Positions 47,801 to 64,000 of a stretch of DNA of 64,000 nucleotides are shown piece after piece. Source of the DNA: Macrostomum lignano (lineage: Eukaryota); assembly GCA_002269645.1 (NCBI GenBank), contig NIVC01000508.1:1-64000 (forward strand). The letters are read 5' to 3'. The stretch's first letter is position 1. Every line of letters begins with the position of its first letter. The notes beneath the pieces are model-generated. The model searched no databases and was not told where the DNA came from. It saw only the letters and a program-made list of their open reading frames with translations. The translations under genes and the position numbers were made by a program.

Positions 47801-50800
47801 CCCTGAAGAATCGGAGGTTAGAGACACCCACCACCCCTGAAGAATCGGAGGTTAGAGACACCCACCACCCCTGAAGAATCGGAGGTTAGAGACACCCACC
47901 ATCCCTGAAGAATCGGAGGTTAGAGACACCCACCACCCCTGAAGAATCAGAGGTTAGAGACACCCACCACCCCTGAAGAATCAGAGGTTAGAGACACCCA
48001 CCACCCCTGAAGAATCAGAGGTTAGAGACACACACCACCCCTGAAGAATCGTAGGTTAGAGACACCCACCACCCCTGAAGAATCGTAGGTTAGAGACACC
48101 CACCACCCCTGAAGAATCGGAGGTTAGAGACACCCACCACCCCTGAAGAATCAGAGGTTAGAGACACCCACCACCCCTGAAGAATCAGAGGTTAGAGACA
48201 CCCACCACCCCTGAAGAATCGGAGGTTAGAGACACCCACCACCCCTGAAGAATCGGAGGTTAGAGACACCCACCACCCCTGAAGAATCGGAGGTTAGAGA
48301 CACCCACCACCCCTGAAGAATCGGAGGTTAGAGACACCCACCATCCCTGAAGAATCGGAGGTTAGAGACACCCACCACCCCTGAAGAATCAGAGGTTAGA
48401 GACACCCACCACCCCTGAAGAATCAGAGGTTAGAGACACCCACCACCCCTGAAGAATCAGAGGTTAGAGACACCCACCACCCCTGAAGAATCAGAGGTTA
48501 GAGACACCCACCACCCCTGAAGAATCGTAGGTTAGAGACACCCACCACCCCTGAAGAATCGGAGGTTAGAGACACCCACCACCCCTGAAGAATCAGAGGT
48601 TAGAGACACCCACCACCCCTGAAGAATCAGAGGTTAGAGACACCCACCACCCCTGAAGAATCGTAGGTTAGAGACACCCACCACCCCTGAAGAATCGGAG
48701 GTTAGAGACACCCACCACCCCTGAAGAATCAGAGGTTAGAGACACCCACCACCCCTGAAGAATCAGAGGTTAGAGACACCCACCACCCCTGAAGAATCAG
48801 AGGTTAGAGACACCCACCACCCCTGAAGAATCAGAGGTTAGAGACACCCACCACCCCTGAAGAATCAGAGGTTAGAGACACCCACCACCCCTGAAGAATC
48901 GGAGGTTAGAAACACCCACCACCCCTGAAGAATCAGAGGTTAGAGACACCCACCACCCCTGAAGAATCAGAGGTTAGAGACACCCACCACCCCTGAAGAA
49001 TCGGAGGTTAGAGACACCCACCACCCCTGAAGAATCGGAGGTTAGAGACACCCACCACCCCTGAAGAATCAGAGGTTAGAGACACACACCACCCCTGAAG
49101 AATCAGAGGTTAGAGACACACACCACCCCTGAAGAATCAGAGGTTAGAGACACCCACCACCCCTGAAGAATCGGAGGTTAGAGACACCCACCACCCCTGA
49201 AGAATCAGAGGTTAGAGACACCCACCACCCCTGAAGAATCGGAGGTTAGAGACACCCACCACCCCTGAAGAATCGGAGGTTAGAGACACCCACCACCCCT
49301 GAAGAATCAGAGGTTAGAGACACCCACCACCCCTGAAGAATCAGAGGTTAGAGACACCCACCACCCCTGAAGAATCGTAGGTTAGAGACACCCACCACCC
49401 CTGAAGAATCGTAGGTTAGAGACACCCACCACCCCTGAAGAATCGTAGGTTAGAGACACCCACCACCCCTGAAGAATCGGAGGTTAGAGACACCCACCAC
49501 CCCTGAAGAATCGGAGGTTAGAGACACCCACCACCCCTGAAGAATCGGAGGTTAGAGACACCCACCACCCCTGAAGAATCAGAGGTTAGAGACACCCACC
49601 ACCCCTGAAGAATCGGAGGTTAGAGACACCCACCACTCCTGAAGAATCAGAGGTTAGAGACACCCACCACCCCTGAAGAATCAGAGGTTAGAGACACCCA
49701 CCACCCCTGAAGAATCAGAGGTTAGAAACACCCACCACCCCTGAAGAATCAGAGGTTAGAGACACCCACCACCCCTGAAGAATCAGAGGTTAGAGACACC
49801 CACCACCCCTGAAGAATCGGAGGTTAGAGACACCCACCACCCCTGAAGAATCGGAGGTTAGAGACACCCACCACCCCTGAAGAATCAGAGGTTAGAGACA
49901 CACACCACCCCTGAAGAATCAGAGGTTAGAGACACACACCACCCCTGAAGAATCAGAGGTTAGAGACACCCACCACCCCTGAAGAATCGGAGGTTAGAGA
50001 CACCCACCACCCCTGAAGAATCAGAGGTTAGAGACACCCACCACCCCTGAAGAATCAGAGGTTAGAGACACCCACCACCCCTGAAGAATCAGAGGTTAGA
50101 AACACCCACCACCCCTGAAGAATCAGAGGTTAGAGACACCCACCACCCCTGAAGAATCAGAGGTTAGAGACACCCACCACCCCTGAAGAATCGGAGGTTA
50201 GAGACACCCACCACCCCTGAAGAATCGGAGGTTAGAGACACCCACCACCCCTGAAGAATCGGAGGTTAGAGACACCCACCATCCCTGAAGAATCGGAGGT
50301 TAGAGACACCCACCACCCCTGAAGAATCAGAGGTTAGAGACACCCACCACCCCTGAAGAATCAGAGGTTAGAGACACCCACCACCCCTGAAGAATCAGAG
50401 GTTAGAGACACCCACCACCCCTGAAGAATCAGAGGTTAGAGACACCCACCACCCCTGAAGAATCGTAGGTTAGAGACACCCACCACCCCTGAAGAATCGG
50501 AGGTTAGAGACACCCACCACCCCTGAAGAATCAGAGGTTAGAGACACCCACCACCCCTGAAGAATCAGAGGTTAGAGACACCCACCACCCCTGAAGAATC
50601 GTAGGTTAGAGACACCCACCACCCCTGAAGAATCGGAGGTTAGAGACACCCACCACCCCTGTAGAATCAGAGGTTAGAGACACCCACCACCCCTGAAGAA
50701 TCAGAGGTTAGAGACACCCACCACCCCTGAAGAATCAGAGGTTAGAGACACCCACCACCCCTGAAGAATCAGAGGTTAGAGACACCCACCACCCCTGAAG

Positions 50801-52710
50801 AATCAGAGGTTAGAGACACCCACCACCCCTGAAGAATCGGAGGTTAGAAACACCCACCACCCCTGAAGAATCAGAGGTTAGAGACACCCACCACCCCTGA
50901 AGAATCAGAGGTTAGAGACACCCACCACCCCTGAAGAATCGGAGGTTAGAGACACCCACCACCCCTGAAGAATCGGAGGTTAGAGACACCCACCACCCCT
51001 GAAGAATCAGAGGTTAGAGACACACACCACCCCTGAAGAATCAGAGGTTAGAGACACACACCACCCCTGAAGAATCAGAGGTTAGAGACACCCACCACCC
51101 CTGAAGAATCGGAGGTTAGAGACACCCACCACCCCTGAAGAATCGGAGGTTAGAGACACCCACCACCCCTGAAGAATCGGAGGTTAGAGACACCCACCAC
51201 CCCTGAAGAATCGGAGGTTAGAGACACCCACCACCCCTGAAGAATCAGAGGTTAGAGACACCCACCACCCCTGAAGAATCAGAGGTTAGAGACACCCACC
51301 ACCCCTGAAGAATCGTAGGTTAGAGACACCCACCACCCCTGAAGAATCGTAGGTTAGAGACACCCACCACCCCTGAAGAATCGTAGGTTAGAGACACCCA
51401 CCACCCCTGAAGAATCGGAGGTTAGAGACACCACCACCCCTGAAGAATCGGAGGTTAGAGACACCCACCACCCCTGAAGAATCGGAGGTTAGAGACACCC
51501 ACCACCCCTGAAGAATCAGAGGTTAGAGACACCCACCACCCCTGAAGAATCGGAGGTTAGAGACACCCACCACTCCTGAAGAATCAGAGGTTAGAGACAC
51601 CCACCACCCCTGAAGAATCAGAGGTTAGAGACACCCACCACCCTGAAGAATCAGAGGTTAGAAACACCCACCACCCCTGAAGAATCAGAGGTTAGAGACA
51701 CCCACCACCCCTGAAGAATCAGAGGTTAGAGACACCCACCACCCCTGAAGAATCGGAGGTTAGAGACACCCACCACCCCTGAAGAATCGGAGGTTAGAGA
51801 CACCCACCACCCCTGAAGAATCGGAGGTTAGAGACACCCACCACCCCTGAAGAATCAGAGGTTAGAGACACACACCACCCCTGAAGAATCAGAGGTTAGA
51901 GACACCCACCACCCCTGAAGAATCGGAGGTTAGAGACACCCACCACTCCTGAAGAATCAGAGGTTAGAGACACCCACCACCCCTGAAGAATCAGAGGTTA
52001 GAGACACCCACCACCCCTGAAGAATCAGAGGTTAGAAACACCCACCACCCCTGAAGAATCAGAGGTTAGAGACACCCACCACCCCTGAAGAATCAGAGGT
52101 TAGAGACACCCACCACCCCTGAAGAATCGGAGGTTAGAGACACCCACCACCCCTGAAGAATCGGAGGTTAGAGACACCCACCACCCCTGAAGAATCAGAG
52201 GTTAGAGACACACACCACCCCTGAAGAATCAGAGGTTAGAGACACACACCACCCCTGAAGAATCAGAGGTTAGAGACACCCACCACCCCTGAAGAATCGG
52301 AGGTTAGAGACACCCACCACCCCTGAAGAATCGGAGGTTAGAGACACCCATCCCCCCTGAAGAATCGGAGGGTAGCGACACCCACCACCCCTGAAGAATC
52401 GGAGGGTAGCGACACCCATCCCTGAAGAATCGGTGACTGCAGTACAGTGCTGGCACTCAATCCTTCAAGTTCGCTCCCAATGCCGCCAACTACATGCTAA
52501 TTTTCAGACTCCCTAAAAGCCGCCTCCAGCGGTCGAACCTCAATCGTGATTGCGCACCGCCTGGCAACAGTGGTTGACAGCGATCTAATCTTGGTACTAC
52601 AGGGCGGTCGAGTTGTTGAGCAGGGCAACCACTACGAGCTCATAGCCCAGCCAGACAGCTTGTACAGTCATCTGTGGCGAGAGCAAAATAAAGGCGCTCA
52701 GGGATTTTGA
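40810..52710 (+). CDS. ABCB7: Mitochondrial ABC transporter ABCB7/ATM1: exons about 40810 (or 40767)-41193, 41980-42296, 43354-43663, 45773-46357, 46747-47032, 52508-52710
   Basis: All five introns are GT..AG and phase-consistent. The translation has [123 protein letters not shown], Walker [10 protein letters not shown], signature LSGGEKQR, Walker [12 protein letters not shown] and IAHRL. The start is ambiguous (see findings). Confidence 0.97.
41505..41830. repeat. (GTCT)n/(GTGTCT) microsatellite, ABCB7 intron 1
   Basis: Read directly. Confidence 0.95.
42297..43003. repeat. 34-35-bp minisatellite (ACCATGAGAATCGCCCACACATCAAGAAACCCCAC)n, ABCB7 intron 2
   Basis: Unit read directly; it starts at the donor site and resumes briefly after the SINE. 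Confidence 0.95.
43005..43310 (+). mobile_element. tRNA-derived CORE-like SINE (copy 2) inserted in ABCB7 intron 2
   Basis: Colinear with 6031-6342; A and B boxes present; flanked by AAACCC on both sides (possible TSD). Confidence 0.85.
43700..45730. repeat. 34-bp unit grading to a 30-bp unit (AGACAGACTCACAGCCATATCTACTCAGGT)n, ABCB7 intron 3
   Basis: Unit read directly; about 65 copies. Confidence 0.97.
46390..46690. repeat. (TAG)n microsatellite, ABCB7 intron 4
   Basis: Read directly. Confidence 0.95.
47125..52432. repeat. 34-bp minisatellite (CCCCTGAAGAATCRGAGGTTAGAGACACCCACCA)n, about 155 copies over 5.3 kb, ABCB7 intron 5
   Basis: Period 34 (ACCCCTGAAG at 47221 and 47255); very homogeneous. 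Confidence 0.98.
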
Positions 52711-53114
52711 ACTACTACTGTGTGCGTGCTAAACGCGATCAGTGCTACTTAATAGTAGCATAAATAGGGGAGCATTTTTAATTACGAAGTTGCCTTCCTT
52801 GACTGCCTTGCTTACATACTCATTTGGCATCAAGTAGATTGTTAGTGCGCGATATAGATATATGATAACAAATCAATTTATTGTAGCCCTGGATATTCTT
52901 AATAAGTACGTAATACAATGTGTTCTGCATAAGCTAACTCGAATGCTTATTTTAGTAAATACATGTAGATGTTGTTTAAATTAACGTACGCAAAGTTATT
53001 GAATTGTTGAATTAGATTATGTAATGGCGTGTCTATTATTCTTTTTAGTAATTGTATGAGCCTAAATTGTTTTTAAAGTTTTTTTTTCAAATTTCTTTTA
53101 TAATATAGTGCATA

Positions 53115-53780
53115 GGGCGATTCCCCAGGGGGGGGGGTAATTAGGGTAGGGCGATTAATTGGGGAGTGGAGGCGATTCCCTAGGTGGGTAATTAAGGAGG
53201 GGGCGATTCCCCAGGTGGGTAATTAAGGAGGGGGCGATTCCCTAGGTGGGTAATTAAGGAGGGGGGCGATTCCACAGGTGGGTAATTAAGGGGGGCGATT
53301 CCCCAGGTGAGTAATTAAGGGGGGCGATTCCCCAGGTGGGTAATTAAGGGGGGGCGATTCCCCAGGTGGGTAATTAAGGAGGGGTCGATTCCCCAGGTGG
53401 GTAATTAAGGAGGGGGGCGATTCCCTGGGGGATAATTAAGGAGGGGGGCGATTCCACAGGTGGGTAATTAAGGAGGGGGGCGATTCCCCTGGTGGGTAAT
53501 TAAGGAGGGGGCGATTCCCCTGGTGGGTAATTAAGGAGGGGGCGATTCCCCAGGTGGGTAATTAAGGAGGGGGCGATTCCCCAGGTGGGTAATTAAGGAG
53601 GGGGCGATTCCCCTGGTGGGTAATTAAGGAGGGGGCGATTCCCCAGGTGGGTAATTAAGGAGGGGGCGATTCCCCAGGTGGGTAATTAAGGAGGGGGCGA
53701 TTCCCCAGGTGGGTAATTAAGGAGGGGGCGATTCCCCAGGTGGGTAATTAAGGAGGGGGCGATTCCCCAGGTGGGTAGTT
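53115..53780. repeat. 31-bp minisatellite (GGGGGCGATTCCCCAGGTGGGTAATTAAGGA)n between ABCB7 and CCDC43
   Basis: Unit read directly. Confidence 0.95.
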
Positions 53781-53867
53781 GGAGGCGACAGAGGGGCACT
53801 AAAAATCTCAAATCTTCACAAATTTGTTTTCAGCGAGTTCCAACACCTTCAAGCAGCAGGAGCAGCA

Positions 53868-55651
53868 ATGTCGACAGCGGCGGTCGATGCCGACTCAGCT
53901 TCATCATCAACGGCGACATCATTCGCCGACTGGCTGGCTGACACCATCGCCCAGCTGGCTCCGACGGCCGCCGCCGCGCCGGATATTGACGCCGCCAGTT
54001 TAGTGGACTATTTGACCGGCGTCCTTGAAGCCGACGCCGCCAGCGGCGAAGATGCCGACGCTCAGCGCGACTCGGTCCGCGACATCGTCCAGGAGTTCGG
54101 CCTGCTGCCGCCTGCTGCCAGCGAGGCCGACGCCGAAGCTCTGGCTGGCCGGATTGTCCAGGCCTTCAATCGGGACGCTTCGGCATCTGCCGGCGCCGCT
54201 GCTGCCGCGTCTTCAGCTTCGGCCGAGCTGACCGCGGCTGAGGCGGAGGCGCTGGCCAAGGTTCGCGAGATGACCGTCAAGCAGCAGCCGCCGCCGCCGC
54301 TGCAGCAGCAGCAGGTCAAACAGTCGGATGAGAAGCAGATTATTTTGCAGGTGAGGCTGCGGCTGTCCCAACCTCCCAAATCCTCAGTTGCTGGGCCAGC
54401 CTCCCAGATCCTCAGTTGCTGTCCTAGTCCCCCAAATCCTCAGTTGCTGTCCCAACCTCCCAGATCCTCAGTTGCTGTCCCAGCCTCCCAGATCCTCAGT
54501 TGCTGTCCTAGTCCCCCAAATCCTCAGTTGCTGTCCCAACCTCCCAGATCCTCAGTTGCTGTCCCAACCTCCCAGATCCTCAGTTGCTGTCCCAACCTCC
54601 CAGATCCTCAGTTGCTGTCCCAACCTCCCAGATCCTCAGTTGTTAGGCCAGCCTCCCAGATCCTCAGCTGCTGGGTCAGTCTCCCAAATCCTCAGTTGCT
54701 GGGCCAGCCTCCCAAATCCTCAGTTCCTCAGTTGCTGGGCCAGCCTCCCAGATCCTCAGTACCTCAGTTGCTGGGCCAGCCTCCCAGATCCTCAGTTCCT
54801 CAGTTGCTGGGCCAGCCTCCCAGATCCTCAGTTCCTCAGTTGCTGGGCCAGCCTCCTAGATCCTCAGTTGCTGGGTCAGTCTCCCAAATCCTCAGTTGCT
54901 GGGCCAGCCTCCCAAATCCTCAGTTCCTCAGTTGCTGGGCCAGCCTCCCAGATCCTCAGTACCTCAGTTGCTGGGCCAGCCTCCCAAATCCTCAGTTCCT
55001 CAGTTGCTGGGCCAGCCTCCCAGATCCTCAGTTCCTCAGTTGCTGGGCCAGCCTCCTAGATCCTCAGTTGCTGGGTCAGTCTCCCAGATCCTCAGTTGCT
55101 GGGCCAGCCTCCCAGATCCTCAGTTGCTGGGCCAGCCTCCCAAATCCTCAGTTCCTCAGTTGCTGGGCCAGCCTCCCAAATCCTCAGTTCCTCAGTTGCT
55201 GGGCCAGCCTCCCAAATCCTCAGTTCCTCAGTTGCTGGGCCAGCCTCCCAAATCCTCAGTTCCTCAGTTGCTGGGCCAGCCTCCTAGATCCTCAGTTGCT
55301 GGGCCAGCCTCCCTGATCCTCAGCTGCTGGGCCAGCATCCTGGATATTTGACACTAGAAAATTCCCAAGTCATGCCCAACAAAGCGCCTTGAATCCGCTA
55401 ATCCCCAGGCCTACGCTAACGTATCGGACAGTGACGGCGAGGTGGAGCTAGCGGCAGGCGACAAAGGCCCTGCCATCAACAATCGGGCGTCAAAGGAGAG
55501 CGAGGAGCGACTGAAACGGGAGCGAATGAAGCTGGAGCACGCCAGCAAGGTGGAGAAAGACAAGGCCGACAGGGAGAAGCAGCGCGTCGCTAAAGAGGCC
55601 AGAAAGGAGGCCGAGAAACGGCGAACGCAGAAGCAGGAGAGGCGAAAATGA
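53868..55651 (+). CDS. CCDC43: Coiled-coil domain-containing protein 43: exons 53868-54350 and 55409-55651
   Basis: SFADWL..DYLTGVL..RIVQAF N-terminus; QIILQ|AYANVSD junction (phase 0, CAG|GTGAGG..CCCCAG|GCC); C-terminal EKDKADREKQRVAKEARKEAEKRRTQKQERRK matches the recalled CCDC43 tail (KRTQRGERKR). Confidence 0.9.
54365..55340. repeat. Minisatellite of the AGATCCTCAGTTGCTGGGCCAGCCTCCC family in the CCDC43 intron
   Basis: Same unit as 1268-1640, with local variants (GTCCCAACC and inserted TTCCTCAG). Confidence 0.95.
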
Positions 55652-55775
55652 TCATGGATCAATGCTGTACTTTCTAAGAATATCTTTGGTTTAAACATTT
55701 GCAGTATCTAGTCTTTCAAAGGGTTTTAAGTGGTTTATTTATTGTCGATTTAAAAAAAATAAAGCTTCAGCTTTA

Positions 55776-56208
55776 AAACCGGAAGGGAATCGGTACTCAA
55801 CTAATCGAAACCGGAAGTGAATCGGTAATCAACTAATCGAAACCGGAAGTGTATCGGTAATCAACTAATCGAAACCGGAAGTGAATCGGTAATCAACTAA
55901 TCGAAACCGGAAGTGAATCGGTAATCAACTAATCGAAACCGGAAGTGTATCGGTAATCAACTAATCGAAACCTAAAGTTTATTGGTAAACAACTAATCGA
56001 AACCGGAAGTGTATCGGTACTAAACTAATTGAAACCGGAAGTGAATCGGTAATCAACTAATCGAAACCGGAAGTGAATCGGTAATCAACTAATCGAAACC
56101 GGAAGTGAATCGGTAATAAACTAATCAAAACCGGACGTGAATCGGTAATAAACTAATCGAAACCGGAAGTGAATCGGTAATTAAAGTAATCAAAGCCGGA
56201 AGTGTATC
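55776..56208. repeat. 32-bp minisatellite (AAACCGGAAGTGAATCGGTAATCAACTAATCG)n starting just after the AATAAA at 55758
   Basis: About 14 units read directly. Confidence 0.93.
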
Positions 56209-56654
56209 GCCTTTGTTGTATTAATGTTACTGAAAAAGAACCAGAAAAATTAAAGTTACGATTGTAAAAGCGCTGCCAAGAATTTGCTTTTAACCAGCTT
56301 CGTGTCCCTCAATTATTTACTTGAGTTCGCGCCGCCATAGTGAGCCCTTATCTCTAAATTGGGTGACAGCTCATTATCTCAGTAACTCTAATTTAATATA
56401 TCAGTCAATTTAAATAATTTGGATTTTATCGATTCCTAAATTTGTGTCCGTTTATAACTTTAAGCCACTTTCAAGCATTTTAGTGGCTCAGCTTTGTTTG
56501 TTTTCCTTTGTCTTCTGATCTATTTGTAGCTTTCTTCCAGATCTGCTTGGCTCTTCAAATACCTGATCTGCGTGCTTAATCAATGGATTCATTTTACTAT
56601 TTCTATTTCATTTATTACCTATATTCTGCTTCCAAAAGGTGTGCTTTGGTTTCT

Positions 56655-57190
56655 ACATTGATAGTAATGTACATCACATGCTTTGTACATTGATAAAAAT
56701 GTACATCACCTGCAGTAATGTACTGTACACCATATGCTTTGTACATTGATAGTAATGTACACCACCTGCAGTAATGTACATCACATGCTTTGTACATTGA
56801 TAGTAATGTACATCACATGCTTTGTACATTGATAAAAATGTACATCACCTGCAGTAATGTACTGTACACCATATGCTTTGTACATTGATAGTAATGTACA
56901 CCACCTGCAGTAATGTACATCACATGCTTTGTACATTGATAGTAATGTACATCACATGCTTTGTACATTGGTAGTAATGTACATCACATGCTTTGTACAT
57001 TAATAGTAATGTACATCACCTGCAGTAATGTACACCATATGCTTTGTACATTGATAGTAATGTACATCACCTGCAGTAATGTACACCATATGCTTTGTAC
57101 ATTGATAGTAATGTACATCACCTGCAGTAATGTACACCATATGCTTTGTACATTGATAGTTATGTGCATCACATGCTTAATTGTACATTG
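56655..57190. repeat. About 32-bp composite minisatellite (ATGTACATCACATGCTTTGTACATTGATAGTA with CTGCAGTA variants)
   Basis: Unit read directly. Confidence 0.9.
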
Positions 57191-57529
57191 ATGGTTGTGT
57201 ACACTAAAAGTGCAAAACTTTCTAGCAGGCCAATTGCAAAGAATACGCAGATTTCCTAGGCTTCTATTGAAAAAGTGAATTTCTCTATTTTCATGGCCTG
57301 TACCTTTTATCCTGCCTGCAACTAAAACTTTCTCATAAGGAGATTCTGGTATTTTTCTGGCACTCCCGCCAATTCGCACTTTCACCGATTCTTTGACTTT
57401 AAAGTGCATTCAACTCGACTATGTTGGCTGCAAATATATAACTGTGGGATTTAAGAATAACTTATTCATCTCTTCATGTGTTGCTTGACTTGAAAATTTC
57501 ATAATACTTAACTATCACTTTCTCTGCCC

Positions 57530-58085
57530 CTCCTCACTATCCACCCTATCTCTACACAACCCACCTCATTCTACCCACCCCATCTGACTCTGCCCCACCC
57601 CACATCACCCTACCCATCTCACCCCACTCTACCCCTTCATCTCACTCTAGCTACCCCACCTCACTCTGTTCCACCTCATCTCTACCTACCTCACTCTGCC
57701 CACCCCACCTCACTCTGCCCACCCCACCTCACTCTACCCCATCTCATGCCACCCCAAAACCCTCTACCCCTCCTCACGCCACCGCAAAACCCTCTACCCC
57801 ACCTCACGCCACCGCAAAACCCTCTACCCCACCTCACGCCACCCCAAAACCCTCTACCCCACCTCACGCCACCCCAAAACCCTCTACCCCACCTCACGCC
57901 ACCCCAAAACCCTCTACCCCACCTCACGCCACCCCAAAACCCTCTACCCCACCTCACGCCACCCAAAACCCTCTACCCCACCTCACGCCACCCCAAAACC
58001 CTCTACCCCACCTCACGCCACCCCAAAACCCTCTACCCCACCTCACGCCACCCCAAAACCCTCTACCCCACCTCACGCCACCCCA
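57530..58085. repeat. C-rich degenerate repeat grading into the 30-bp unit (CCCCAAAACCCTCTACCCCACCTCACGCCA)n
   Basis: Unit read directly; it abuts the RIC-3 acceptor. Confidence 0.92.
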
Positions 58086-58098
58086 CCCGGCTCCGCAG

Positions 58099-59565
58099 CC
58101 GGTGGCGGCAGCCTTCAATTCCGGGTTGGCCCAACTGGGCATCGCCCTGGCGGTCGCAGTGGCCTGTCTCTCGGCCATCTACCCGGGTCTGCTGCGCCCG
58201 CTTCTGTCAGCCGCCGGGACTCGTCTATTCCAATCATCGAGTGCTGATAGCAGCGGTAGCGATAGCAACGCGTTGAATCCCCAGCAACCGTTGTCAAGGC
58301 CGCCGCCGGGACCGAATCCGCACCTGCAAGGTCGGCAGCAGCATCAACAGCCGCAGGCGTCTCTTCTACTAGCCATAGTGCTGCCAATCTACAGTGTGGC
58401 AATCGTGTGCTTTCTCATCTACACTCTAGTGAGGTTTCTCAGCGTCCGTCCCACCCGACGGCAGCTGTCTATGGCCGCGGCCGCTGATGCTGCTGCAGTC
58501 GCCAACGACAAGGCTGTCGTCTACGATGCTTCGTTGAGAGAATTTCGTCGCTCCGGCGAGCGTCAGTTTACTCCGATTTCTAAGAAAATGGATGGCGTGA
58601 GTCGGTTTCTAAATTTTTATTCAACTCGATGTAGCTTGGCTTTTGAGTAGAAATTTTATTGTTGAATACTTGTTGAAGAATTGCATCATAGAAGAAAGCT
58701 CCTCGTGTTTCCTAGAAACAATTCCGTTTCTGAGAAAAATTCTTTGTGGTTCCAAAAACAGGCTATAGGAGTCCTAAAAACAGATTATATATAACTTCTA
58801 GAAACAGACGTTCTGATTCCTAGAAACAGACTTTCTGATTCCTAGAAACAGACTTTCTGATTCCTAGAAACAGGCTTTTTGATTCCTAGAAACAGGCTTT
58901 CTAATTCCTAGAAACAGGCCTTCTGATTTCTAGAAACAGGCTTTCTTATTCCTAGAAACAGGCTTTCTTATTCCTAGAAACAGGCTTTCTTATTCCTAGA
59001 AACAGGCCTTCTGATTCCTAGAAACAGGCCTTCTGATTTCTAGAAACAGGCCTTCTGATTTCTAGAAACAGGCCTTCTCATTTCTAGAAACAGGCCTTCT
59101 AATTCCTAGAAACAGGCTTTCTGATTCCTAGAAACAGGCTTTCTGATTCCTAGAAACAGGTCTTCTAATTTTTAAAAACAGGCTTTCTTATTCCTCAAAA
59201 CAGCTTCTCTCTGATTCCTAAAGCGTCATAGCTAGAAATTCACAAACTGAAACGAACTGTTCAATTCCTAGAAACCCTTCCCCAAACAGCATTCGCAGCC
59301 ATCCAACGAACCGCCTTTGGAATCGTTGGAGCGTGACCTTCAACGCCTGGTGGAGCGATTGGACGCCAGGGAGCCGCAGCAGCAGCGGCGACACTACGGC
59401 GACGCCGATGTCGGCTACGGAATCGACAAAAACTCGGGGGCCGAACTGGCCGACCGGGCCGCGCTGCGGCGAGAGCTGGCCGCCACCGAAGTGCGGATGA
59501 TGCGGCTGCTGGAGCAGATCCGGAGAGGCGAGTTGAACGCGTCTGAGGACGACTGCGCTAGCTAG
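58099..59565 (+). CDS. RIC3: RIC-3 (nicotinic acetylcholine receptor chaperone): exons 58099-58596 and 59290 (or 59299)-59565; no in-frame genomic ATG found
   Basis: N-terminal hydrophobic LGIALAVAVACLSAIYP, Pro-rich spacer, TM LLAIVLPIYSVAIVCFLIYTLVRF (recalled RIC3 IIPIYGFGIFLYILY) and C-terminal coiled coil LRRELAATEVRMMRLLEQI; phase-0 intron GGC|GTGAGT..ACAG|CAT. Confidence 0.85.
58790..59220. repeat. 22-bp minisatellite (TTCCTAGAAACAGGCTTTCTGA)n, RIC-3 intron
   Basis: Unit read directly. Confidence 0.93.
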
Positions 59566-59624: not shown

Positions 59625-60845
59625 GAATCTGGGGAAAATCTTCCCTAGAAGTATTGGAAATAGGAATCTGAGGAATTTTTCCTTAGGGTACTTTTATTTA
59701 GGGAGAATCCTCCCTTTGGAGTATTTGGATCTGAGGGGAGAATCTTCCCTTTGGGATGTTTGGATCTGAGAGGAGAATCTTCCCTTAAAGATATTTGGAT
59801 CTGAGAGGAGAATCTTCCCTTTGGGATATTTGGATCTAAGGGGAGAATCTTCCCTTTGAGATATTTGGATCTGAGAGGAGAATCTTCCCTTTGGGATATT
59901 TGGATCTGAGGGCAGAATCTTCCCTTTGGGATATTTGGATCTGAGGGGAGAATCTTCCCTTTGGGATATTTGGATCTGAGGGCAGAATCTTCCCTTTGGG
60001 ATATTTGGATCTGAGGGCAGAATCTTCCCTTTGGGATATTTGGATCTGAGGGGAGAATCTTCCCTTTGAGATATTTGGATCTGAGAGGAGAATCTTCCCT
60101 TTGGGATATTTGGATCTGAGGGGAGAATCTTCCCTTTGAGATATTTGGATCTGAGGGGAGAATCTTCCCTTTGAGATATTTGCATCTGAGGGCAGAATCT
60201 TCCCTTTGGGATATTTGGATCTGAGGGGAGAATCTTCCCTTTGGGATGTTTGGATCTGAGAGGAGAATCTTCCCTTAAAGATATTTGGATCTGAGAGGAG
60301 AATCTTCCCTTTGGGATATTTGGATCTAAGGGGAGAATCTTCCCTTTGAGATATTTGGATCTGAGAGGAGAATCTTCCCTTTGGGATATTTGGATCTGAG
60401 GGCAGAATCTTCCCTTTGGGATATTTGGATCTGAGGGGAGAATCTTCCCTTTGGGATATTTGGATCTGAGGGCAGAATCTTCCCTTTGGGATATTTGGAT
60501 CTGAGGGCAGAATCTTCCCTTTGGGATATTTGGATCTGAGGGGAGAATCTTCCCTTTGAGATATTTGGATCTGAGAGGAGAATCTTCCCTTTGGGATATT
60601 TGGATCTGAGGGGAGAATCTTCCCTTTGAGATATTTGGATCTGAGGGGAGAATCTTCCCTTTGAGATATTTGCATCTGAGGGCAGAATCTTCCCTTTGGG
60701 ATATTTGGATCTGAGGGGAGAATCTTCCCTTTGGTATATTTGGATCTGAGAGGAGAATCTTCCCTTTGGGATATTTGGATCTGAGGGGAGAATCTTCCCT
60801 TTGAGATATTTGCATCTGAGGGGAGAATCTTCCCTTTGAGATATT
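59625..60845. repeat. 35-bp minisatellite (AGAATCTTCCCTTTGGGATATTTGGATCTGAGGGG)n
   Basis: Unit read directly. Confidence 0.96.
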
Positions 60846-61559
60846 TGAATTGGAAAGCAGCTAGGACTTATTGTTAATTATAGGATTGAACGTAATACCC
60901 CTAAGTCCTAGCTGCTTTCCTACTGTAGCGATTGCTTAGTTGCTGCCTCATGCTAGTTGCGGGTTCTTTGTAGAGCAGTGTGCACATGTAGTTTCAGTAC
61001 TACTGCTAATACTAAAGATAGTATTTTCCACGCGCTGCAAAACTTTTCTGTACAGATTTATAGTTTGGCATTTTCTATATGCTTAGAGCTCATAGCTGTT
61101 TAGTTTTTTTTCCTTTGCTAATATGACTACTTAGAGTAGTGTAGAGTGAAAAAGTTTTTTATCAGTGGCAATTTTTTTTAATATTCGTTTTACCGATTCT
61201 AGTAAAAAAGTATAAATATTGCATAATTATTGCGATTGACCGAATCTCTGTAAAGGTTTTTTGTGTTTTCATTTTTGTGTTTCTACCACAATAATAATAA
61301 ATTTCACAAAAAATAATTAACTGCTAAAATTATAATCTGAATCTATTTTAAGATCTTAGTTAAGATCTTAAAAATCAAGGGCGATATTTTCTTAATTTTT
61401 TACTATTTTTTATTATATAAAACTCCCACAGTCTACTGTTAAGTAGTGCTATTACAGACTTTTCCTTGATAAAATACTTGTTTAGTGGCTAGAAATTTAG
61501 GAAGCATTCATTCTAGATTTGAATATCATTTCGAATAGCTATTGTTTAAAATTGGGTTC

Positions 61560-63205
61560 CTTCCTCATTCCTAAAAACAGCCCCATCCTCATTCCTAGAA
61601 GCAGCCCCATCCTCATTCCTAGAAACAGCCCCATCCTCATTCCTAGAAACAGCCCCATCCTCATTCCTAGAAACAGCCCCATCCTCATTCCTAGAAACAG
61701 CCCCATCCTCATTCCTAGAAACAGCCCCATCCTCATTCCTAGAAACAGCCCCCATCCTCATTCCTAGAAACAGCCCCATCCTCATTCATAGAAACAGCCC
61801 CATCGTCATTCCTAGAAACAGCCCCATCCTCATTCCTAGAAACAGCCCCATCCTCATTCCTAGAAACAGCCCCATCCTCATTCCTAGAAACAGCCCCATC
61901 CTCATTCCTAGAAACAGCCCCATCCTCATTCCTAGAAACAGCCCCATCCTCATTCCTAGAAACAGCCCCATCCTCATTCCTAGAAACAGCCCCATCCTCA
62001 TTCCTAGAAACAGCCTCCTTATTTGTAGAAACAAAGCTCCATCGCGATTCCTAGATACGCATCGAATTATTGTTTTTTTGAAAAACGGTAATGTATACAA
62101 CATGTATCTAGCGCATTCAGTCTGCCAGCCTGCTGAGAGTAGCGGTTTGACCCACAGTTTTACATATGTAGTTTGAATAATACATTACAATATCTAAGTT
62201 CCTCATTCCTAGAAACAGCCCCCATCCTCATTCCTAGAAACAGTCCCCATCCTCATTCCTAGAAGCAGCCCCATCGTCATTCCTAGAAACAGCCCCATCC
62301 TCATTCCTAGAAACAGCCCCATCCTCATTCCTAGAAACAGCCCCATCCTCATTCCTAGAAACAGCCTCCTTATTTGTAGAAACAAAGCTCCATCGCGATT
62401 CCTAGATACGCATCGAATTATTGTTTTTTTGAAAAACGGTAATGTATACAACATGTATTTAGCGCATTCAGTCTGCCAGCCTGCTGAGAGTAGCGGTTTG
62501 ACCCACAGTTTTACATATGTAGTTTGAATAATACATTACAATATCTAAGTTCCTCATTCCTAGAAACAGCCCCATCCTCATTCCTAGAAACAGCCCCCAT
62601 CCTCATTCCTAGAAACAGTCCCCATCCTCATTCCTAGAAGCAGCCCCATCGTCATTCCTAGAAACAGCCCCATCCTCATTCCTAGAAACAGCCCCATCCT
62701 CATTCCTAGAAACAGCCCCATCCTCATTCCTAGAAACAGCCTCCTTATTTGTAGAAACAAAGCTCCATCGCGATTCCTAGATACGCATCGAATTATTGTT
62801 TTTTTGAAAAACGGTAATGTATACAACATGTATTTAGCGCATTCAGTCTGCCAGCCTGCTGAGAGTAGCGGTTTGACCCACAGTTTTACATATGTAGTTT
62901 GAATAATACATTACAATATCTAAGTTCCTCATTCCTAGAAACAGCCCCATCCTCATTCCTAGAAACAGCCCCATCCTCATTCCTAGAAACAGCCCCATCC
63001 TCATTCCTAGAAACAGCCTCCTTATTTGTAGAAACAAAGCTCCATCGCGATTCCTAGATACGCATCGAATTATTGTTTTTTTGAAAAACGGTAATGTATA
63101 CAACATGTATTTAGCGCATTCAGTCTGCCAGCCTGCTGAGAGTAGCGGTTTGACCCACAGTTTTACATATGTAGTTTGAATAATACATTACAATATCTAA
63201 GTTCA
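61560..63205. repeat. Composite tandem repeat: blocks of the 24-bp unit (TTCCTAGAAACAGCCCCATCCTCA) alternating with four copies of an about 190-bp spacer
   Basis: The spacer AGCCTCCTTATTTGTAG..ATATCTAAGTT starts at 62012, 62363, 62738 and 63015. Confidence 0.95.
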
Positions 63206-63289: not shown

Positions 63290-64000
63290 CAGGCAGTCAG
63301 TCGACGACGTACATGCGAGTATTTAGCGCTGTGGGCGCTCCAGACCTCGTAGTTGGGGTGCCTGCAGCAGTCGCTGCTGCACCAGCCGTGTGCAGTACAG
63401 TAACAACTCGGCGCGGATCAATTGGCCAACTAGCTGGAGTCGCAGACGGAGTCCAACACGTTTGGACGGACTGAGGGAAGTGATGAAAAGGGGGCGCCAT
63501 GCAGCTAGAGGGGCGCCAGCTACAGGGGGAGACAGCTGGAGCGATTCTGAAGTCCACTGTTACACTGACGGCTCAATGAGGCATGGTCTTTCCGGCTTCG
63601 GAGCTTGCGTCTTCTTCAAGGGAGAAGTGGTGTGGAGCTACTCCCAGCACACTGGGCCCAACTCCAGTGTTTTTCAGAGCGAGGTGCTTCCCATCAGCTC
63701 CTGCGCGGCAGAGCTGCGCCGAAGGCAGCTCAGCGATCGAAAATTTATTTTTCACTCTGACAGCCAAGCAGGCCTTCGGGCCCTCTGCCGCTCCAGATCT
63801 GTCCTGGACTGCAACTGCAACGCCCAGCTCATCGGGCTTGCGCTAGGCAACCAGGTGGAGCTAAGATGGATCCCGGGCCGTGCTGGTTTCCTCGGCAACG
63901 AGCGGGCTGACCTGCTGGTTCCGCCGGCGCGCTGCTGGGGCCGGGTCCGGGGGCCCTCATCCCCGCCTCGATGATCAACTCCCGCGTTAAGCGCTGGACT
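63290..64000 (+). mobile_element. Non-LTR retrotransposon fragment (I/R1/Loa-type) with RNase H domain, degenerate, running off the window
   Basis: YTDGS..SGFGAC..NSSVFQSEV..FHSDSQAGLRAL..VELRWIPGRAGFLGNERADLL is an RNase H D-E-D-D pattern typical of LINE pol C-termini. Confidence 0.88.

What the first reader, a model, noticed from the sequence alone, without database searches (positions are those of the whole stretch)
58085..58200. RIC-3 has no genomic start codon but begins exactly in phase after a 3' splice acceptor: candidate spliced-leader-donated AUG
Seen: CTCCGCAG| at 58091-58098 is followed at once by the in-frame codons CCG GTG GCG GCA GCC TTC.. (PVAAAFNSGLAQLGIALAVAVACL). There is no in-frame ATG before the first hydrophobic segment, and I found no phase-0 ATG-bearing exon upstream (55.7-58.1 kb is mostly tandem repeat). 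Known: flatworm spliced leaders end in AUG, and in Schistosoma this AUG has been shown to act as an initiator Met. Inference: SL+exon gives M-PVAAAFNSGLAQLGIALAV, a typical short RIC-3 N-terminus, so the gene would need trans-splicing to be translated.
Basis: partly seen in the sequence, partly recalled or inferred. Interest (0 to 1): 0.78.

Follow-up and report, generated by a model that had tools for sequence, protein, structure and literature searches.

The report
RIC-3 gene using the spliced-leader AUG
A flatworm (Macrostomum lignano) RIC-3 chaperone gene has no start codon of its own and almost certainly takes its AUG from the trans-spliced leader, which is a sound example of a mechanism known in flatworms since 2006.

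Summary
The window is the first 64 kb of Macrostomum lignano scaffold NIVC01000508.1. GenBank already carries a 5'-partial RIC-3 CDS (PAA81876.1, Mlig011656.g3) that starts at base 58099, the first base after CTCCGCAG. That annotation set its 5' ends from spliced-leader read peaks.

The M. lignano leader ends in ATG. Leader plus exon 1 plus exon 2 gives a 255-codon ORF whose first AUG is the leader's. The first genomic in-frame ATG is codon 125, downstream of both transmembrane segments and of RIC-3's invariant C..YP....P motif. No ATG lies in frame between the upstream stop (57502) and the exon.

One ATG in the upstream minisatellite is a single base out of frame. In the duplicate locus that frame is full of stop codons, so I rejected it.

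A second RIC-3 paralogue, about 31% identical, has the same layout: a TTTCAG acceptor in phase 0, an in-frame stop 48 nt upstream, and its first genomic ATG after TM1.

I saw no RNA reads, so trans-splicing at this site is inferred. The mechanism is established for flatworms (Cheng et al. 2006), so this is a new member of a known kind and only modestly interesting.

The parts
57651..58096 (+). 3' end of the outron: an AG-free, C-rich tract. Its last 354 nt (57732-58085) are an 11.8-copy 30-nt minisatellite, CTCTACCCCACCTCACGCCACCCCAAAACC.
   Evidence: TRF. The last AG upstream of the acceptor ends at 57650, giving a 448-nt AG-free zone, and positions -50 to -4 are 70% pyrimidine. The copy number is 29.8 in the duplicate locus L002, so the array is non-coding.
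57746..57748 (+). ATG inside the minisatellite, rejected as the start codon.
   Evidence: It lies 353 nt upstream of 58099, so it is out of frame by one base. In L002 the same ATG (9100) is 901 nt upstream, also out of frame, and its reading frame holds eight TAA stops.
58072..58076 (+). Candidate branch point CTCAC (yUnAy), with the A at 58075, 22 nt upstream of the AG.
   Evidence: Read directly from the sequence. This is inference only.
58091..58098 (+). 3' splice acceptor CTCCGCAG, the proposed trans-splice site.
   Evidence: It is identical in L002 (13/13 bases upstream of the exon). It ends in CAG but misses one position of the published M. lignano trans-splice motif [T/C]TNCAG.
58099..58596 (+). 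Exon 1, 166 codons in phase 0 at both ends. It encodes PVAAAF...KKMDG and is followed by the donor GTGAGT at 58597.
   Evidence: The GenBank CDS starts at 58099. Translation. It differs from the duplicate copy at 3 of 498 bases with no indels.
58126..58182 (+). Transmembrane segment 1 (residues 10-28). With the next six codons (to 58200) it carries the RIC-3 invariant residues C23, P29 and P34.
   Evidence: Hydropathy and alignment A1.
58363..58431 (+). Transmembrane segment 2 (residues 89-111), with the LPIYxVxIVxFLIYTL motif.
58471..58473 (+). First genomic in-frame ATG (codon 125). Starting here would give a 130-residue product with neither transmembrane segment.
58597..59298 (+). Intron (GTGAGT...TTCGCAG) containing a 22-nt tandem repeat at 58798-59220.
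   Evidence: The splice is confirmed by the GenBank protein, which reads ...KKMDG|PSNEPP....
59299..59565 (+). Exon 2 coding part, the coiled-coil region, ending in stop TAG at 59563-59565.

Best explanation
The gene is an intact two-exon Macrostomum lignano RIC-3 homologue (Mlig011656.g3), a likely chaperone of nicotinic receptors. Its pre-mRNA is trans-spliced at the CAG acceptor 58096-58098. The 35-nt spliced leader, which ends in AUG, is joined directly to C58099. That AUG becomes the first AUG of the mRNA and sits in phase 0, so translation gives M-PVAAAFNSGLAQLGIALAVAVAC..., 255 residues. Without trans-splicing no full-length protein can be made, because the next AUG lies after both membrane segments. 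Shown here: the sequence layout, the annotated CDS start, the phase, the lack of any genomic ATG, and the conservation of the region before the first ATG. Inferred: that the leader is joined at this site in vivo, and that ribosomes initiate on its AUG.
For: (1) The GenBank CDS PAA81876.1 ('partial', 254 aa) spans 58099-59565 of the record, which matches window coordinates. The duplicate copy, PAA79022.1, starts at the homologous base. The 13 unique, in-frame open bases just upstream (58086-58098) are left out of the CDS, so the annotated 5' end is not simply the edge of mappable sequence.
(2) The annotation pipeline (TBONE) cut transcripts at peaks of trimmed leader-containing reads (PMC5730564). 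The neighbouring gene's CDS also starts one base after a TTTTCAG acceptor.
(3) The M. lignano leader ends in ATG (PMC8629364). Wiberg et al. 2023 call this ATG a translation start codon (PMC10468722).
(4) In the modelled mRNA the leader AUG is the first AUG and opens a 255-codon ORF. The next AUG is at 58471.
(5) The RIC-3 invariant residues C23, P29 and P34, and all of TM1 and TM2, are encoded upstream of that ATG.
(6) The acceptor follows a 448-nt AG-free, pyrimidine-rich tract.
(7) The paralogue group Mlig009353/Mlig012159 is 31% identical overall and 56% over TM1. It is also annotated as partial. Its CDS starts at, or 3 nt after, a CATTTCAG acceptor in phase 0. It has an in-frame TAG 48 nt upstream and its first genomic ATG after TM1.
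(8) There is precedent. Cheng et al. 2006 showed that the flatworm leader AUG can initiate, and that more than 40 S. mansoni cDNAs require it (as cited in PMC9851317; PMC12582326). In E. granulosus, 143 of 187 leader-bearing clusters are full length only with the leader ATG (PMC3510090).
Against: The acceptor CCGCAG departs from [T/C]TNCAG at one position. The leader AUG has a weak initiation context (T at -3, C at +4). An in-phase acceptor has a 1 in 3 chance on its own. Parasitic flatworms often use the same acceptor for cis- and trans-splicing (PMC12582326), so a cis-spliced isoform cannot be excluded.
Confidence: 0.85

Rival explanations
1. The acceptor at 58098 is used, always or in some isoforms, for ordinary cis-splicing from an unannotated upstream exon that carries the ATG.
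For: The same acceptors are widely shared between cis- and trans-splicing in parasitic flatworms (PMC12582326). There are 84 ATG-to-GT phase-0 stretches in 55660-58090 if any GT counts as a donor.
Against: No ATG-to-GT[AG]AG phase-0 mini-exon exists between the upstream gene and the acceptor, in the window or in L002. The RNA-seq-based gene model has no such exon in either copy. The single-exon paralogue shows the same lack of an ATG, with an in-frame stop right upstream.
Confidence: 0.07
2. Translation starts at a near-cognate codon, such as GTG at 58102, so the leader AUG is not needed.
For: GTG is the second codon of the exon. Non-AUG starts are used in other trans-splicing taxa (PMC9851317).
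Against: On a trans-spliced mRNA the in-frame leader AUG lies 3 nt upstream and a scanning ribosome meets it first. The paralogue has no GTG at the matching place; it reads TTT CTG CAC.
Confidence: 0.03
3. The ATG at 57746 in the minisatellite is the real start. The one-base frame difference would then be an assembly error in a C run, giving RIC-3 a 118-residue proline-rich repeat N-terminus.
For: Adding one base to the single 29-nt repeat unit near 57964 would bring ATG 57746 into frame. The peptide repeat PPQNPLPHLT reads the same on both sides of that unit.
Against: In the duplicate locus the array has 29.8 units instead of 11.8. There the ATG is 901 nt from the exon and out of frame, its frame has eight TAA stops, and the RIC-3 frame has a stop inside the array. 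The annotated CDS leaves the array out. All other RIC-3 proteins have only 5-35 residues before TM1.
Confidence: 0.02
4. The protein starts at the genomic ATG 58471, or the locus is a decaying copy. The upstream part would then be an untranslated leader.
For: 58471 is the first genomic in-frame ATG. The 372 nt before it hold no ATG in any frame, as a long 5' UTR under selection might.
Against: The Pfam RIC3 match begins at residue 21 and the family's invariant residues lie at residues 23-109, nearly all upstream of that ATG. Exon 1 differs from its duplicate at only 3 of 498 bases, two of them at third codon positions, with no indels. The leader AUG would be translated in frame anyway.
Confidence: 0.02

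Closest known systems
[quoted passage not shown]
   Same: A flatworm leader ending in AUG is joined in frame to an exon that has no ATG of its own before the conserved N-terminus. The leader supplies the initiator Met.
   Different: The species is a free-living macrostomorph and the gene is different. Initiation was shown experimentally in Schistosoma. Here it is inferred from sequence and annotation.
Echinococcus granulosus leader-bearing transcripts that are full length only with the leader ATG (PMC3510090)
   Same: The argument is the same: the leader ATG is needed for the N-terminus to match conserved orthologues.
   Different: In Echinococcus the leader was seen on the cDNAs. Many of those transcripts also have another ATG within five codons, whereas this gene has none for 124 codons.
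RIC-3 family (C. elegans RIC-3, human RIC3; Pfam PF15361)
   Same: Two hydrophobic segments separated by a proline- and glutamine-rich linker, followed by a coiled coil. The motifs C..LYP....P and LPxYxxxxxxFLxYTL are conserved.
   Different: The protein is short (255 aa), highly diverged (21-27% identity) and only just above the Pfam cut-off. It has no genomic start codon. RIC-3 proteins of flukes, nematodes, a spider and a mollusc, and one M. lignano paralogue (Mlig010549.g1, MELSVQTK...), all start at a genomic ATG.
slORFs, reading frames created by spliced-leader addition in nematodes, Oikopleura and trypanosomes (PMC9851317)
   Same: The start codon lies in the leader, not in the gene.
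   Different: Those mostly use near-cognate NUG codons and often give alternative or extended ORFs. Here a true AUG is required for the only functional ORF.

Membership tests
RIC-3 (PF15361) | Pfam RIC3 profile match above the gathering score | tested here: met
   29.8 bits against a cut-off of 28.9, covering residues 21-189 and model positions 2-136 of 146. The margin is small, and exon 1 alone scores 26.5 bits.
RIC-3 (PF15361) | Two hydrophobic segments with a proline-rich linker and the conserved TM1 and TM2 motifs | tested here: met
   Hydropathy peaks at residues 10-28 and 89-111. C23, P29, P34, P96, Y98, Y108 and T109 are invariant across 11 RIC-3 sequences.
RIC-3 (PF15361) | Coiled-coil segment after TM2 | tested here: inconclusive
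   The conserved L222, L226, T229, E230 and M233 align with the coiled-coil region of other RIC-3 proteins. No coiled-coil predictor was run.
RIC-3 (PF15361) | Promotes maturation of nicotinic or 5-HT3 receptors | not testable with these tools
   Needs co-expression assays.
Flatworm mRNAs dependent on the spliced-leader AUG | The organism's spliced leader ends in AUG | tested here: met
   The source is M. lignano. Its leader ends ...TTGCATG (PMC8629364; PMC5173321).
Flatworm mRNAs dependent on the spliced-leader AUG | The leader is actually joined at this acceptor | not testable with these tools
   Only indirect evidence: the 5'-partial GenBank CDS starts at 58099, and its pipeline used leader-read peaks. 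No reads could be examined.
Flatworm mRNAs dependent on the spliced-leader AUG | The leader AUG is in frame with the main ORF, with no stop in between | tested here: met
   Leader plus exons gives a 255-codon ORF from the leader AUG.
Flatworm mRNAs dependent on the spliced-leader AUG | No genomic AUG can give the conserved N-terminus | tested here: met
   There is no in-frame ATG from the stop at 57502 to 58471. The minisatellite ATG and upstream mini-exons were rejected.
Flatworm mRNAs dependent on the spliced-leader AUG | Ribosomes initiate at the leader AUG in vivo | not testable with these tools
   Needs proteomics, ribosome profiling or reporter assays.

The most novel reading that the evidence does not exclude
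Dependence on the leader's AUG may be an old, maintained feature of this gene family rather than an accident of one locus. Two M. lignano RIC-3 paralogue groups that share only about 31% identity both lack a genomic start codon and begin in phase 0 at a trans-splice acceptor. A third paralogue and the fluke orthologues have their own ATG. If so, trans-splicing is an obligatory switch for making these receptor chaperones, and many of the M. lignano proteins flagged 'partial' in GenBank are really complete.
Probability: 0.45. Interest if true: 0.4.

Novelty: new member of a known kind. Interest (0 to 1): 0.3.

Why it matters
It matters for annotation. In M. lignano, and probably other flatworms, a protein flagged '5' partial' whose CDS begins right after an acceptor can be complete once the leader's Met is added, and gene finders that require a genomic ATG will truncate or miss such genes. 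It also matters for biology. It adds a clean, testable case in a flatworm that can be made transgenic, where loss of trans-splicing should abolish a specific protein. It shows the same dependence in two diverged paralogues. It does not reveal a new mechanism.

Tried and rejected
- **Minisatellite ATG (57746) as a start hidden by a one-base assembly error.** Rejected, because the duplicate locus has a different copy number, a different frame and many stops.
- **Scan for an upstream ATG-bearing mini-exon with a GT[AG]AG donor in phase 0.** None was found in either copy. With any GT allowed there are 84 trivial candidates, which tells us nothing.
- **Conservation between the two copies as a guide to hidden exons.** Unique outron segments are also nearly identical, with exact blocks up to 199 nt, so this does not discriminate.
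- **Search for a spliced-leader RNA gene in the window.** No match to even the last 12 nt of the leader.
- **Homology search with the N-terminal 81 residues plus Met, hoping to find transcript-derived proteins.** It returned nothing, not even the known protein, so it is uninformative.
- **Literature and supplement searches for Mlig011656, Mlig009353 and Mlig012159.** No hits.
- **Wasik et al. 2015.** Not in the held library.
- **Whole-library HMMER search.** No close orthologue outside M. lignano, only distant RIC-3 relatives. Whether other Macrostomum species share the layout could not be tested.

Full report
**What is there**

CTCCGCAG lies at 58091-58098. From 58099 an open frame reads PVAAAFNSGLAQLGIALAVAVACLSAIYPGLLRPLL... 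and runs to a GTGAGT donor at 58597. A second exon, 59299-59565, follows a TTCGCAG acceptor and ends in TAG. The joined product has two hydrophobic segments, at residues 10-28 and 89-111. It matches Pfam RIC3 at 29.8 bits, just above the 28.9 cut-off. Exon 1 alone scores 26.5 bits.

**Source and existing annotation**

A protein search found one cluster, from Macrostomum lignano. It holds PAA81876.1 (Mlig011656.g3) and PAA79022.1 (Mlig011656.g4), both named 'hypothetical protein, partial', both 254 aa and both starting PVAAAF. The contig carrying PAA81876.1 is NIVC01000508.1, and the gene sits at 58099-59565 of that record. The second copy lies on NIVC01000655.1 (locus L002) and starts at the homologous base after the same CTCCGCAG.

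The annotation pipeline matters here. Wudarski et al. 2017 trimmed the leader from leader-containing RNA-seq reads, mapped them, and used the resulting peaks to set the exact 5' ends of mRNAs before calling ORFs (PMC5730564). The 13 unique bases just upstream (58086-58098) are open in the same frame yet are excluded from the CDS. The 5' end is therefore not just the edge of the repeat. The neighbouring gene's CDS (from 53835) likewise begins one base after a TTTTCAG acceptor.

**The leader**

M. lignano uses one 35-nt spliced leader, CGGTCTCTTACTGCGAAGACTCAATTTATTGCATG, on about 30% of its genes (PMC8629364). A longer form with the same 3' end is given in PMC5173321. Wiberg et al. 2023 note that its final ATG is probably a translation start codon (PMC10468722).

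I modelled the mature mRNA as leader plus exon 1 plus exon 2. The leader AUG is the first AUG and opens a 255-codon ORF. The next AUG in any frame is the in-frame one at 58471, codon 125, which would give a 130-residue product with neither membrane segment. The first 372 nt of exon 1 contain no ATG at all. Dinucleotide shuffles give 4.1 on average and reach zero in 0.25% of trials.

**Why the region before the first ATG must be translated**

A search of 1.84 billion representative proteins returned only distant relatives. Those that carry a source name are RIC-3 proteins of flukes, a spider and a mollusc, and others resemble nematode RIC-3. In the alignment the invariant residues are C23, P29 and P34 (the TM1 motif C..LYP....P) and P96, Y98, Y108 and T109 (TM2). 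All lie upstream of codon 125. Every other RIC-3 in the alignment starts with Met 5-35 residues before TM1, so M plus nine residues before TM1 is ordinary.

**Rivals tested**

- *An in-frame genomic ATG upstream.* The frame stays open back to TAA at 57502 only because the repeats are C-rich, and it holds no ATG.
- *The ATG at 57746 inside the 30-nt minisatellite.* It is 353 nt from the exon, and one extra base in the single 29-nt unit would put it in frame. In L002 the array has 29.8 units rather than 11.8 and the ATG is 901 nt away and out of frame. Its frame has eight TAA stops, and the RIC-3 frame has a stop inside the array. The array is evolving as non-coding DNA.
- *A hidden upstream exon.* No ATG-to-GT[AG]AG phase-0 mini-exon exists between the upstream gene's stop (55651) and the acceptor in either copy. 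A weak-donor or distant exon cannot be ruled out without RNA data.
- *A dead gene.* Exon 1 differs between the copies at 3 of 498 bases with no indels, and exon 2 at 2 of 267. The intron has 38 mismatches and 88 gap columns.

**The acceptor**

It ends in CAG, the commonest acceptor triplet in this species. CCGCAG departs at one position from the enriched trans-splice motif [T/C]TNCAG. It is the first AG after a 448-nt AG-free tract, positions -50 to -4 are 70% pyrimidine, and a CTCAC branch-point candidate lies 22 nt upstream. These features are consistent with a working 3' splice site but do not prove one.

**A second, independent case**

M. lignano has at least three RIC-3 groups. Group b (Mlig009353.g1 and g2, Mlig012159.g1) is 31% identical to this gene overall and 56% over TM1. 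It is also deposited as 'partial' and starts (F)LHSQQAKGYAALGLAALCFAALYP. In locus L004 the CDS begins on the first base after CATTTCAG, which fits the motif perfectly. In L003 it begins 3 nt after the same acceptor. With the leader added, the ORF starts MFLHSQQ... in phase 0. An in-frame TAG lies 48 nt upstream with no ATG in between, and the first genomic in-frame ATG is codon 37, after TM1.

Group c (Mlig010549.g1) has its own ATG (MELSVQTK...) 19 nt after a TTTTCAG, so there a leader AUG would be out of frame. Two diverged paralogues with the same layout make an annotation accident unlikely.

**How it compares with what is known**

A 3'-terminal AUG is a general feature of flatworm leaders. 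Cheng et al. 2006 showed that it can serve as the initiator. It is in frame in 28% of S. mansoni trans-spliced transcripts, and more than 40 cDNAs need it (as cited in PMC9851317; PMC12582326; PMC5832876). In E. granulosus, 143 of 187 leader-bearing clusters are full length only with the leader ATG (PMC3510090). This gene is therefore a new example of a known mechanism. I found no paper that mentions this gene.

**Limits**

I saw no RNA reads, RACE products or peptides. The leader AUG has a weak context (T at -3, C at +4). Acceptors can serve both cis- and trans-splicing in flatworms.

The UniProt models from the older assembly start one codon earlier, at QPVAAAF. I read this as an aligner extending the leader's GCA(T)G onto the genomic GCAG, but that is a guess.

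**Possible operon**

The upstream same-strand gene ends at 55651 and has an AATAAA at 55758-55763. After subtracting about 1.5 kb of tandem repeats, the spacer to 58099 is under 1 kb. That is the threshold Ustyantsev and Berezikov used to call operons. RIC-3 may therefore be a downstream operon gene, which would make trans-splicing necessary in any case. This is inference.

**Verdict**

The case is ordinary for flatworm biology, so interest is 0.3.

Noticed in passing
window 53820-53870; L002 5729-5745: The neighbouring 252-aa gene has its first exon starting at 53834 after aaatttgtTTTCAG and its own ATG at 53868. In the duplicate locus the same spot reads aaatttgtTGCATG|cgag. The acceptor's TTCAG is replaced by GCATG, the last five bases of the spliced leader, exactly in register with the exon (12/13 match to AATTTATTGCATG). 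The nearby flanks are otherwise identical. Leader-like 15-mers with 3 mismatches are expected by chance, so only the register is odd. It could be gene conversion from a leader-bearing cDNA, or an assembly artefact.
   Followed up: partly
window 53834-53940: For the neighbouring gene, a leader AUG joined at 53834 would be out of frame. It would open a reading frame of about 35 codons that overlaps the gene's own ATG at 53868. This contrasts with the in-frame RIC-3 case.
   Followed up: partly
L003 and L004 3990-4790; L005 and L006 2980-3880: M. lignano has at least three RIC-3 paralogue groups. Group b (Mlig009353, Mlig012159) is a single-exon gene that also has no genomic start codon and begins in phase 0 after CATTTCAG. 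Group c (Mlig010549) has its own ATG 19 nt after a TTTTCAG acceptor.
   Followed up: yes
window 48099-59565; L003 and L004 1-8789: Both RIC-3 loci that lack an ATG lie 1.2-2.4 kb downstream of a same-strand gene, with a spacer filled by repeats. Here the order is ABC transporter, 252-aa gene, RIC-3. At the paralogue it is eIF3e, RIC-3, Kelch protein. By the published rule of less than 1 kb after subtracting repeats, these would count as operons.
   Followed up: no
window 59288-59298: Exon 2 has two in-frame CAG acceptors 9 nt apart (aaaCAG at 59287-59289 and tcgCAG at 59296-59298). The deposited protein uses the second. Using the first would add His-Ser-Gln.
   Followed up: no
window 54368-55340, 55776-56209, 56650-57177, 57550-58085, 58798-59220, 59701-60847, 61562-63204: Different minisatellites with periods of 16-375 nt are very dense in introns and spacers. 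Copy numbers differ strongly between the two duplicated loci, for example 11.8 against 29.8 units of the 30-mer.
   Followed up: partly
window 63390-63974: An ORF contains an RNase H-like motif (...HSDSQAGLRAL...IPGRAGFLGNERAD...), which suggests a retrotransposon fragment near the end of the window.
   Followed up: no
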